DNA from: Botryllus schlosseri
Taxonomy: Eukaryota
Length of the DNA stretch: 64,000 nt
Reading direction: 5' to 3'
NCBI GenBank assembly: GCA_051294905.1
Contig: CM119383.1
Coordinates: forward strand, 11,594,001-11,658,000
Shown: positions 29,049 through 29,491 of the stretch, piece after piece
Layout: every line of letters begins with the position of its first letter
Position numbering within the stretch: position 1 is the first letter of the stretch
Translations under genes and position numbers: made by a program
Notes under the pieces: generated by a model
Told to the model about the DNA's origin: nothing
The model's input: only the letters and a program-made list of their open reading frames with translations
The model's database searches: none

Positions 29049-29061
29049 TACTCTTTTTTTT
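29049..29061 (+). promoter_or_regulatory. TCT/5'TOP-like pyrimidine tract (also readable as a 3' splice site ending at 29067)
   Basis: CTCTTTTTTTT begins 50 nt upstream of the RPL37A-like ATG. Confidence 0.45.
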
Positions 29062-29100
29062 GTGCAGTACCGTAGGGTATAGCTGTATCGCAGGGATATA

Positions 29101-29376
29101 ATGGCGAAGCGTACCAAAAAGGTCGGAATCGTCGGAAAGTATGGAACCAGATACGGTGCATCGCTTCGTAAACTCATCAAGCGCATGGAGGTATCCTAGC
29201 ACAAGAAATACACCGGCCCCAGCGGAAAGGATGACCTGAAAAGAGTGGCTGTGGGTATATGGTACTGCAAGTCCTTGGATAGGAAGATAGCTGGTGGAGC
29301 CTGGGTTCCTGAAACCACGACCGCTACGACAGTAAAGTATGGTATCAAGCGATTGAGGGATCAACAATACTCCTGA
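29101..29376 (+). pseudogene. RPL37A: 60S ribosomal protein L37a (eL43)-like, intronless, Q33* nonsense codon, Zn ligands largely lost
   Basis: [24 protein letters not shown]...AVGIW...AGGAW. In-frame TAG at 29197-29199, terminal TGA at 29374-29376, AATAAA at 29473-29478. Confidence 0.9.
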
Positions 29377-29491
29377 ATCCTTGGAATATACCTCGACTGC
29401 ATTCATTTGGGCATACCAGAGACATTCTATTGTACGACATCAAATCAACTGGTGAAGTCTGAATTTATTGTCAATAAATCAACCTAATGAG

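What the first reader, a model, noticed from the sequence alone, without database searches (positions are those of the whole stretch)
29049..29478. Zinc-free RPL37A/eL43 variant with a single nonsense change
Seen: the N-terminal 24 aa match canonical eL43, and the frame is intact apart from TAG at codon 33 (one transition from CAG, Gln). Three of four zinc-ribbon cysteines are replaced: YTCSFCGK becomes YTGPSGK (1-aa deletion) and CxxC becomes CKSL, while AVGIW, AGGAW and the C-terminal helix remain conserved. There is a TCT/TOP-like tract upstream, AATAAA downstream, and no poly(A) tail or TSD. Known: eukaryotic eL43 is a C4 zinc-ribbon protein, and Zn-free (C-) paralogs of ribosomal proteins are a bacterial zinc-economy strategy. 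Inference: targeted ligand loss suggests selection on a Zn-independent protein, either a specialised paralog that died recently or a lineage-wide C- eL43 with an allele or assembly error.
Basis: partly seen in the sequence, partly recalled or inferred. Interest (0 to 1): 0.7.

Follow-up and report, generated by a model that had tools for sequence, protein, structure and literature searches.

The report
Dead copy of zinc-free eL43 gene
The stretch is a young, silent, mRNA-derived spare copy of a sea squirt's only eL43 ribosomal-protein gene; the copy is ordinary, but the missing zinc-binding cysteines are real, shared by all sampled tunicates, and repeated in four other ribosomal proteins of this genome.

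Summary
Window 29101-29376 is an intronless 91-codon eL43 frame with one TAG (codon 33), YTGPSGK and CKSL.

- **Source gene.** An intact copy on contig C14 (CAG at codon 33, same cysteine losses) keeps a relative's gene order. It supplies over 98% of a very abundant eL43 mRNA with an oligopyrimidine 5' end.
- **Window copy.** It matches C14 only from the transcription start to 6 nt before the poly(A) site. Its diagnostic letters make up 0.1-1.5% of RNA reads, so it is a young processed pseudogene.
- **The stop codon.** T at 29197 appeared in none of four runs. One DNA contig carries this copy's diagnostic letters with CAG, so the stop is a private allele or an error.
- **No canonical gene.** The genome holds no C4 eL43. 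The annotated eL43 of Ciona, Clavelina and Phallusia has the same motifs. Oikopleura keeps two cysteines. Amphioxus, hemichordate, echinoderm and vertebrate sequences keep four.
- **Other proteins.** eL37, uS14/eS29, eL34 and eS26 of this genome have also lost ligands. eL40, eL42, eS31 and (as far as seen) eS27 have not.

I found no paper describing this. Zinc economy as the cause is untested.

The parts
29059..29100 (+). Copy of the eL43 5' UTR, starting in an oligopyrimidine (TOP-like) tract. This is the 5' limit of similarity to the C14 gene.
   Evidence: blastn similarity to C14 begins at 29059 (alignment). RNA 5' ends of the C14 transcript read GGG+CCTTTTCGTTTGTGCAG..., so the parent mRNA starts at the matching pyrimidine tract (table 7).
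29101..29376 (+). eL43 (RPL37A) reading frame of 91 codons plus TGA, without introns, interrupted once.
   Evidence: It differs from the C14 CDS at 9 sites: 5 synonymous, Q33*, A76T, D90Y and TAA>TGA.
29197..29199 (+). TAG at codon 33 (CAG in the C14 gene).
   Evidence: In one search, 2500 of 2508 RNA reads have C at 29197, and all laid RNA and DNA contigs have C. This includes the X1 contig, which otherwise carries this copy's diagnostic letters.
29209..29229 (+). First zinc-knuckle position, YTGPSGK (canonical YTCSFCGK). Both Cys are replaced and one residue is deleted.
   Evidence: Identical in Ciona, Clavelina and Phallusia eL43.
29266..29277 (+). Second zinc-knuckle position, CKSL (canonical CxxC). 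The first Cys is kept and the second is Leu.
   Evidence: The kept Cys is invariant in all 40 tunicate-type sequences.
29377..29485 (+). Copy of the eL43 3' UTR with AATAAA at 29473-29478. This is the 3' limit of similarity to C14.
   Evidence: The C14 mRNA is polyadenylated after ...CAACCTTCTGTG, 6 nt beyond the end of similarity (table 7, loose end at 29485).
29484..30392 (.). A repeat element of about 0.9 kb with terminal inverted repeats, abutting the 3' end of the copy. It is not part of the copy but may explain the missing A-tail and target-site duplication.
   Evidence: Inverted repeat I3: arms 29484-29507 and 30369-30392, 88% complementary. DNA word depth rises from about 12/109 to 10^4-10^6 from 29480 onward (table 2).

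Best explanation
The window holds a young, transcriptionally silent, mRNA-sized duplicate of this ascidian's single functional eL43 gene. It is most likely a retrocopy, that is, a processed pseudogene. The functional gene lies on contig C14 at 17124903-17125178.

The cysteine losses were not acquired by this copy. They belong to the parent gene and to eL43 of tunicates in general. That protein is the only eL43 available to the ribosome. It therefore must fold and bind rRNA without the canonical four-cysteine zinc site (inferred, not measured).

The TAG is a recent private change on the assembled haplotype, or less likely a consensus error. It sits on a copy that was already unexpressed.
For: **Shown: extent of the duplicate.** The two copies are 96% identical only over window 29059-29485 versus C14 17124863-17125314. 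The flanks are unrelated.

**Shown: the limits match the parent mRNA.** RNA 5' ends read GGG+CCTTTTCG..., and the A-tail follows ...CAACCTTCTGTG.

**Shown: C14 is the ancestral locus.** A close relative's contig has AARP2CN(-), DnaJ_C(-), eL43(+). G000 has the same order at C14:17113457-17114360, 17117852-17118844 and 17124903.

**Shown: expression.**
- RNA depth is about 1300-1500 per strand with 6% of the run read.
- At every diagnostic site over 98% of reads carry C14 letters.
- At 29316 and 29319 only 4 and 3 of 2530 reads carry the window's letters.
- At the 5' UTR site 29100, 11 of 2233 reads are not the C14 letter.

**Shown: the stop is not fixed.** The X1 contig over 29101-29484 has A at 29193 (this copy's letter) with C at 29197, within one 31-mer. 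It also has G at 29334 and 29368. That gives an intact frame differing from the C14 protein only by A76T.

**Shown: no C4 gene.** The PF01780 scan of all 495 Mb gives only these two copies plus two matches at E 0.07 and 0.7 that do not extend.

**Shown: lineage-wide and constrained.**
- Ciona XP_002130012.1, Clavelina XP_076821551.1 and Phallusia CAB3265724.1 share YTGP-SGKDD...CKSL.
- Oikopleura dioica CBY09038.1 has SPFCG...C[AK]RT.
- The amphioxus, hemichordate, echinoderm and vertebrate sequences aligned have four Cys.
- pS is saturated with dN 0.04-0.10 between ascidians.
- 140 of 150 library representatives are CCCC. Seven exceptions are tunicate-type. The other three look like broken copies or mis-modelled genes; two of these keep three Cys and the third has its first knuckle unaligned.
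Against: - There is no A-tail and no target-site duplication.
- The parent gene has no introns, so the classic 'introns lost' mark of retroposition is uninformative.
- A transposon abuts the 3' end. A DNA-level event is therefore not excluded.
- dN/dS between the copies is low (0.07-0.11), which a functional second gene would also give. The copies differ at too few sites for this to be decisive (my binomial estimate P about 0.03-0.15).
- Only one raw-read RNA run and one contig set were laid. Tissue- or stage-restricted expression of the window copy is not excluded.
- Logan contigs pop bubbles, so assigning the X1 contig to this locus rests on letters linked within one 31-mer.
- Zinc content of tunicate ribosomes was not measured.
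- The AlphaFold model is of low confidence (pLDDT 59).
Confidence: 0.8

Rival explanations
1. The window copy is, or very recently was, a second working eL43 gene. The TAG would then be only a private null allele or an assembly error.
For: An intact frame on the X1 haplotype. Low dN/dS versus C14 (0.07). A full-length 5' UTR with a pyrimidine tract and AATAAA. T at 29197 seen in no run.
Against: No upstream similarity to the C14 promoter region. The window's diagnostic letters make up 0.1-1.5% of RNA reads, against a 0.04% background at a non-diagnostic site. The assembled haplotype carries private changes, two of them damaging (Q33*, D90Y). The divergence is too small for dN/dS to discriminate.
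Confidence: 0.08
2. The copy arose by a DNA-level event, such as a small segmental duplication, capture by a transposon, or filler DNA at a break, and not by reverse transcription of the mRNA.
For: No A-tail and no target-site duplication. A repeat with terminal inverted repeats directly abuts the 3' end. The parent has no introns, so intron absence says nothing.
Against: Both limits of similarity fall within a few bases of the mapped transcript ends of the parent. A random DNA duplication of 427 bp would hit both only by coincidence.
Confidence: 0.12
3. One reading: a specialised zinc-free paralog of a canonical C4 eL43 gene, analogous to bacterial C- paralogs, that died recently.
For: Ligand loss with conservation of the rest of the protein.
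Against: No C4 eL43 anywhere in the genome. The cysteine-poor form is the highly expressed one and is the annotated eL43 of other tunicates.
Confidence: 0.02

Closest known systems
Processed pseudogenes of ribosomal-protein genes (for example the many RPL37A-derived copies in mammals)
   Same: An mRNA-bounded, promoter-less, unexpressed duplicate on another chromosome that is accumulating disabling changes.
   Different: No A-tail or target-site duplication. The parent itself lacks introns. The copy is very young (about 4% divergence), and its stop codon is not fixed: one haplotype still has an open frame.
Canonical eukaryotic/archaeal eL43 (RPL37A, Pfam PF01780), a C4 zinc-ribbon protein of the large subunit
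   Same: A full-length match to the family (117 bits for the intact copy), 64-70% identity to solved eL43 chains, and the same length and predicted secondary-structure order.
   Different: Three of the four zinc-ligand cysteines are replaced (G, S, L), with a one-residue deletion in the first knuckle. This state is fixed in ascidians.
Bacterial C-/C+ ribosomal protein pairs (L31, L33, L36, S14, S18). The C- paralogs are switched on under zinc limitation. This is from my own knowledge and was not re-read here.
   Same: A zinc-ribbon ribosomal protein that has lost its cysteine ligands yet still serves in the ribosome. uS14 is affected in both cases.
   Different: Tunicates have no C+ partner gene and so no switch. 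The cysteine-poor form is constitutive and is the sole gene. Whether zinc supply had any role is unknown.

Membership tests
eL43 / Ribosomal_L37ae (PF01780) | Significant full-length match to the family profile | tested here: met
   C14 protein E 4.1e-34, 117 bits, profile 1-84/85. The window pieces give E 3.7e-11 and 2.3e-16. Best solved-structure match 4v6w_Cp, E 7.7e-35.
eL43 / Ribosomal_L37ae (PF01780) | Four-cysteine zinc ribbon (CxxC ... CxxC) | tested here: not met
   Ligand columns read G, S, C, L against C, C, C, C in the canonical sequence. So it belongs to the family by descent but not to the zinc-binding form.
eL43 / Ribosomal_L37ae (PF01780) | It is the ribosome's eL43: the sole gene, highly expressed | tested here: met
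   True for the C14 gene. It is the only intact family match in 495 Mb, and RNA depth is about 2700 with 6% of a run read. Incorporation into ribosomes itself was not tested.
Processed pseudogene (retrocopy) | Similarity to the parent confined to the mature transcript | tested here: met
   Similarity covers 29059-29485 only. The parent's transcript ends were mapped by RNA loose ends.
Processed pseudogene (retrocopy) | Poly(A) tail and flanking target-site duplication | tested here: not met
   No A-run after 29485. The upstream 10-mer does not recur nearby. A repeat element abuts the 3' end.
Processed pseudogene (retrocopy) | Introns of the parent absent | tested here: inconclusive
   The parent on C14 has no CDS intron either. 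One relative (L013) has an intron after codon 63.
Processed pseudogene (retrocopy) | Not expressed, and frame disabled | tested here: met
   The window's letters make up 0.1-1.5% of RNA reads. TAG at codon 33 on the assembled haplotype. The frame is open on the X1 haplotype.
Bacterial-type C-/C+ zinc-responsive paralog system | A C+ counterpart encoded in the same genome | tested here: not met
   No C4 eL43 in G000.
Bacterial-type C-/C+ zinc-responsive paralog system | Expression of the C- form induced by zinc limitation | not testable with these tools
   No zinc-limitation expression data were available.

The most novel reading that the evidence does not exclude
Tunicates as a subphylum have rebuilt much of the zinc-binding part of the cytosolic ribosome into zinc-free forms. 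In this genome five of the nine CxxC ribosomal proteins lack at least two ligands: eL43, eL37, uS14/eS29, eL34 and eS26. The change was shown here in other tunicates for eL43, eL37 and eL34. This would be a natural, constitutive 'C-' eukaryotic ribosome with no C+ alternative. It was not described in any paper I could search, and it is at odds with the recent statement that these motifs are exceptionally conserved across eukaryotes (PMC13090322).
Probability: 0.5. Interest if true: 0.75.

Novelty: new variant of a known kind. Interest (0 to 1): 0.55.

Why it matters
The window object itself is an ordinary young pseudogene. What it reveals is less ordinary. A whole chordate subphylum runs its ribosomes on an eL43 with one of four zinc ligands left. 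In this genome four further 'zinc' ribosomal proteins are also missing ligands.

That gives a natural experiment for two open questions:
- whether zinc in eukaryotic ribosomal proteins is structurally required;
- whether ribosomes act as a cellular zinc store, as proposed in PMC13090322.

It also tells annotators that 'C4 zinc ribbon' cannot be assumed for tunicate eL43, eL37, eS26, eL34 and uS14.

Tried and rejected
- **Weak Pfam matches on C6.** The two extra PF01780 matches (L007, E 0.07; L008, E 0.7) were read in all frames. They do not extend and carry several stops, so I treat them as chance.
- **Splice acceptor upstream.** I first read 'ttttgtgcag' as a splice or trans-splice acceptor. 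RNA 5' ends run through it, so it is part of the 5' UTR.
- **Structure.** The AlphaFold2 model from a tunicate-only alignment had mean pLDDT 59. It was too poor for a fold search, so none was run.
- **Protein atlas.** It returned only generic eL43 clusters.
- **Run accessions.** A paper search for the Logan run accessions found nothing.
- **Contigs without DNA.** DNA of the contigs carrying P0104 and P0245 could not be fetched.
- **uS14 homologs.** The uS14 exon (33 aa) was too short for the homolog search. uS14 and eS26 were therefore not checked in other tunicates.
- **Target-site duplication.** A search for the 10-mer upstream of the copy found no nearby repeat.
- **Literature.** Five searches found no description of cysteine loss in tunicate ribosomal proteins. 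This is absence in an open-access library only.

Full report
**1. The observation**

Window 29101-29376 (+) translates to a 91-codon eL43 sequence with one internal stop, TAG at 29197-29199, codon 33. The two pieces match Pfam PF01780 at E 3.7e-11 and 2.3e-16. Against solved eL43 chains, YTGP-SGK aligns with YTCSFCGK with a one-residue gap, and CKSL aligns with CxxC. The pyrimidine run upstream and AATAAA (29473-29478) are present. An A-tail and a target-site duplication are absent.

**2. A second, intact copy, and which one is the gene**

A search of the window's own genome (495 Mb, 219 contigs) finds a second copy on contig C14 at 17124903-17125178. It has an open 91-codon frame, CAG at codon 33, and the same YTGPSGK and CKSL.

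A Pfam scan of the whole genome finds only these two copies. Two further matches at E 0.07 and 0.7 do not extend in any frame. So there is no canonical four-cysteine eL43 gene.

The two copies are 96% identical over window 29059-29485 only. The flanks are unrelated.

A close relative's contig carries a 97%-identical eL43 and shows the order AARP2CN(-), DnaJ_C(-), eL43(+). Contig C14 has the same order and orientation at 17113457-17114360, 17117852-17118844 and 17124903. C14 is therefore the ancestral locus and the window copy is the derived one.

**3. Reads**

One raw-read RNA run (X24), one set of probable RNA contigs (X6) and two sets of DNA contigs (X1, X2) of the same species label were laid on 28600-29900 at 90% likeness.

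RNA coverage:
- Reads cover 29084-29479 at about 1300-1500 per strand, with about 6% of the run read.
- There are none over the upstream flank.
- At every site that separates the copies, over 98% of reads carry the C14 letter. At 29197, 2500 of 2508 have C. At 29316 and 29319, only 4 and 3 of 2530 have the window's letter. At the 5' UTR site 29100, 11 of 2233 are not the C14 letter.
- Background at a non-diagnostic variant site (29295) is 1 in 2685.

Transcript ends:
- Clipped 5' ends read GGG followed by CCTTTTCGTTTGTGCAGTACTGTTGGG. I read the GGG as added during library preparation and not encoded. The rest is the C14 5' UTR, starting at an oligopyrimidine tract.
- Clipped 3' ends read TCTGTG followed by A's.
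- So the parent mRNA is TOP-like, is not trans-spliced, and ends 6 nt beyond the end of similarity between the copies.
- The duplicated unit is thus the mRNA. This is why I read the window copy as a retrocopy, despite the missing tail and target-site duplication.
- A repeat of about 0.9 kb with terminal inverted repeats (29484-30392), at enormous copy number, abuts the 3' end and may have disturbed it.

**4. The stop codon**

T at 29197 was seen in no run. The X1 DNA contig over 29101-29484 carries the window copy's letters at eight diagnostic sites. It has C at 29197, G at 29334 and G at 29368.

A at 29193 and C at 29197 lie within one 31-mer. This combination therefore exists as a real sequence and is not a mosaic produced by bubble popping. 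It is the window locus on another haplotype, with an open frame that differs from the C14 protein only by A76T.

X1 also differs from the window in the unique flank (28846, 28995, 29049, 29053, 29057). The assembled sequence therefore looks like a genuine, more decayed haplotype and not a string of errors. A consensus error at the single base cannot be excluded.

dN/dS against C14 is 0.11 for the reference and 0.07 for the X1 haplotype. With five to eight differences this has little power.

**5. The cysteine losses belong to the lineage**

Sequences sharing the losses:
- The best database hits to the intact protein share the losses.
- A cluster look-up shows that the nearest cluster contains eL43 of Ciona intestinalis (XP_002130012.1), Clavelina lepadiformis (XP_076821551.1) and Phallusia mammillata (CAB3265724.1). 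All have YTGP-SGKDD...CKSL.
- Another cluster contains Oikopleura dioica CBY09038.1, with SPFCG...C[AK]RT and two cysteines left.
- A third group (YTNPYTGG...CKKSG) comes from marine metatranscriptomes and from compact genomic contigs. On those contigs eL43 lies 210 bp upstream of a Nop-domain gene.
- Some Oikopleura-type transcripts begin with the translation of what I recall as the Oikopleura spliced leader (THPIFESDFDCLT). This is from memory.

Sequences keeping four cysteines:
- The amphioxus, hemichordate, echinoderm and vertebrate sequences aligned all have four.
- Of the 150 best representatives in the 1.84-billion-protein library, 140 are CCCC.
- Seven exceptions are tunicate-type. The other three look like broken copies or mis-modelled genes; two of these keep three Cys and the third has its first knuckle unaligned.

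Constraint:
- Between ascidian species, synonymous sites of the gene are saturated while dN is 0.04-0.10.
- The replaced knuckles are invariant among ascidians, so the cysteine-poor protein is under strong constraint.

Identity of the organism:
- The best named hits are Clavelina and Ciona savignyi for eL37 (80%) and Styela clava for eL34 (86%).

**6. Other zinc ribosomal proteins of this genome**

| Protein | Location | What the sequence shows |
|---|---|---|
| eL37 | C9:26355134-26355271; 88 aa, no intron | CRTTG and a 7-residue deletion in place of CRRCG...CxxCG. The same in Ciona savignyi H2Z9U1, Clavelina and appendicularian-type transcripts. |
| uS14/eS29 | C6 | C-R-I-T and S-R-Q-C |
| eL34 | C2 and C10 | CAVT and CSSA. 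The same in Styela clava and Phallusia; a similar state occurs in plants. |
| eS26 | C8 | CESSGAR and YSVSA |
| eL42 | C16 | cysteines kept |
| eL40 | C11 | cysteines kept |
| eS31 | C11 | cysteines kept |
| eS27 | C7 | three of four cysteines seen; the fourth lies in an exon I did not locate |

Ligand loss is therefore a pattern and not a one-off.

**7. How it works**

*Shown.* The window copy is a silent duplicate. The C14 gene supplies the cell's eL43.

*Inferred.* Tunicate eL43 keeps the ribbon-like hairpins without a Cys4 zinc site, presumably held by rRNA contacts and the Gly-Pro turn. The AlphaFold model keeps the helix, three strands and helix order, but at low confidence.

*Not excluded.* A degenerate metal site may remain, using the kept Cys and nearby Asp or His.

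*Open.* Why tunicates lost these sites is unknown. Zinc sparing, avoidance of cysteine oxidation or mis-metallation, and relaxed constraint in a fast-evolving lineage are all possible. Nothing here discriminates between them.

**8. Literature**

A 2026 paper lists these nine proteins and describes their CxxC motifs as exceptionally conserved across eukaryotes. It is based on six model organisms, none of them a tunicate (PMC13090322). Five searches found no description of the tunicate state. The sequences themselves are public and annotated as eL43.

**Verdict**

The window feature is an ordinary young processed pseudogene whose stop codon is not fixed. The cysteine-poor eL43 is real, expressed, constrained and tunicate-wide, and is part of a wider loss of zinc ligands in this genome's ribosomal proteins.

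Noticed in passing
L016:1375-1641 (-) = G000:C9, around 26355134-26355271: eL37 of this genome is an intronless 88-aa protein that has lost three of four zinc-ligand cysteines and carries a 7-residue deletion. Ciona savignyi, Clavelina and appendicularian-type transcripts share this state.
   Followed up: yes
L025 (G000:C6:11358464-11358568), L033/L034 (G000:C8:12970481-12970606 and 12965981-12966109), L029-L032 (G000:C10 and C2): uS14/eS29 (C-R-I-T ... S-R-Q-C), eS26 (CESSGAR ... YSVSA) and eL34 (CAVT ... CSSA) also lack zinc ligands. eL42, eL40 and eS31 keep them, and eS27 does as far as seen. Only eL34 was checked in other tunicates (Styela, Phallusia).
   Followed up: partly
window 29484-30392: A repeat of about 0.9 kb with 24-nt terminal inverted repeats and internal TTTTGAC/AAAAA sub-repeats. 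DNA word depth reaches 10^5-10^6 in two runs, so it is one of the most abundant repeats of this genome.
   Followed up: partly
L002:1693-1773 (G000:C14, 3' UTR of the functional eL43 gene): A 27-nt tandem duplication (attgtacgacatcgaatcaactggtga) is present in the C14 3' UTR and absent from the window copy.
   Followed up: no
L029/L031 (G000:C10:26228191-26228477) versus L030/L032 (G000:C2:13282691-13283320): eL34 has an intron-containing copy on C2. An intronless copy on C10 has its two halves in different frames, so it is probably another ribosomal-protein retrocopy.
   Followed up: no
proteins P0005, P0008-P0010, P0015, P0017 (eL43) and P0126, P0130 (eL37): Metatranscriptome proteins of two different genes begin with the same translated leader, MG-LISRVSSRTYR. 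This suggests a spliced leader of an unidentified planktonic tunicate group. Others begin with THPIFESDFDCLT, which matches what I recall as the Oikopleura leader.
   Followed up: no
window 29295: RNA reads and part of the X6 contigs carry G where both assembled copies have T (synonymous, Ala65). This is a polymorphism of the expressed gene.
   Followed up: no
window 57633-58388 (-), 54880-55338 (-), 5876-6685 (-), 4212-4883 (-): A single-exon uridine kinase frame (PF00485), a GatC-domain frame, a zinc-knuckle gag-like frame and a DUF7047 frame. The last two are probably from a retroelement.
   Followed up: no
L013:350-540: In one related ascidian the eL43 gene has an intron after codon 63. 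This genome and two other relatives (L028 and the P0245 contig) have none, so the intron was lost within ascidians.
   Followed up: partly
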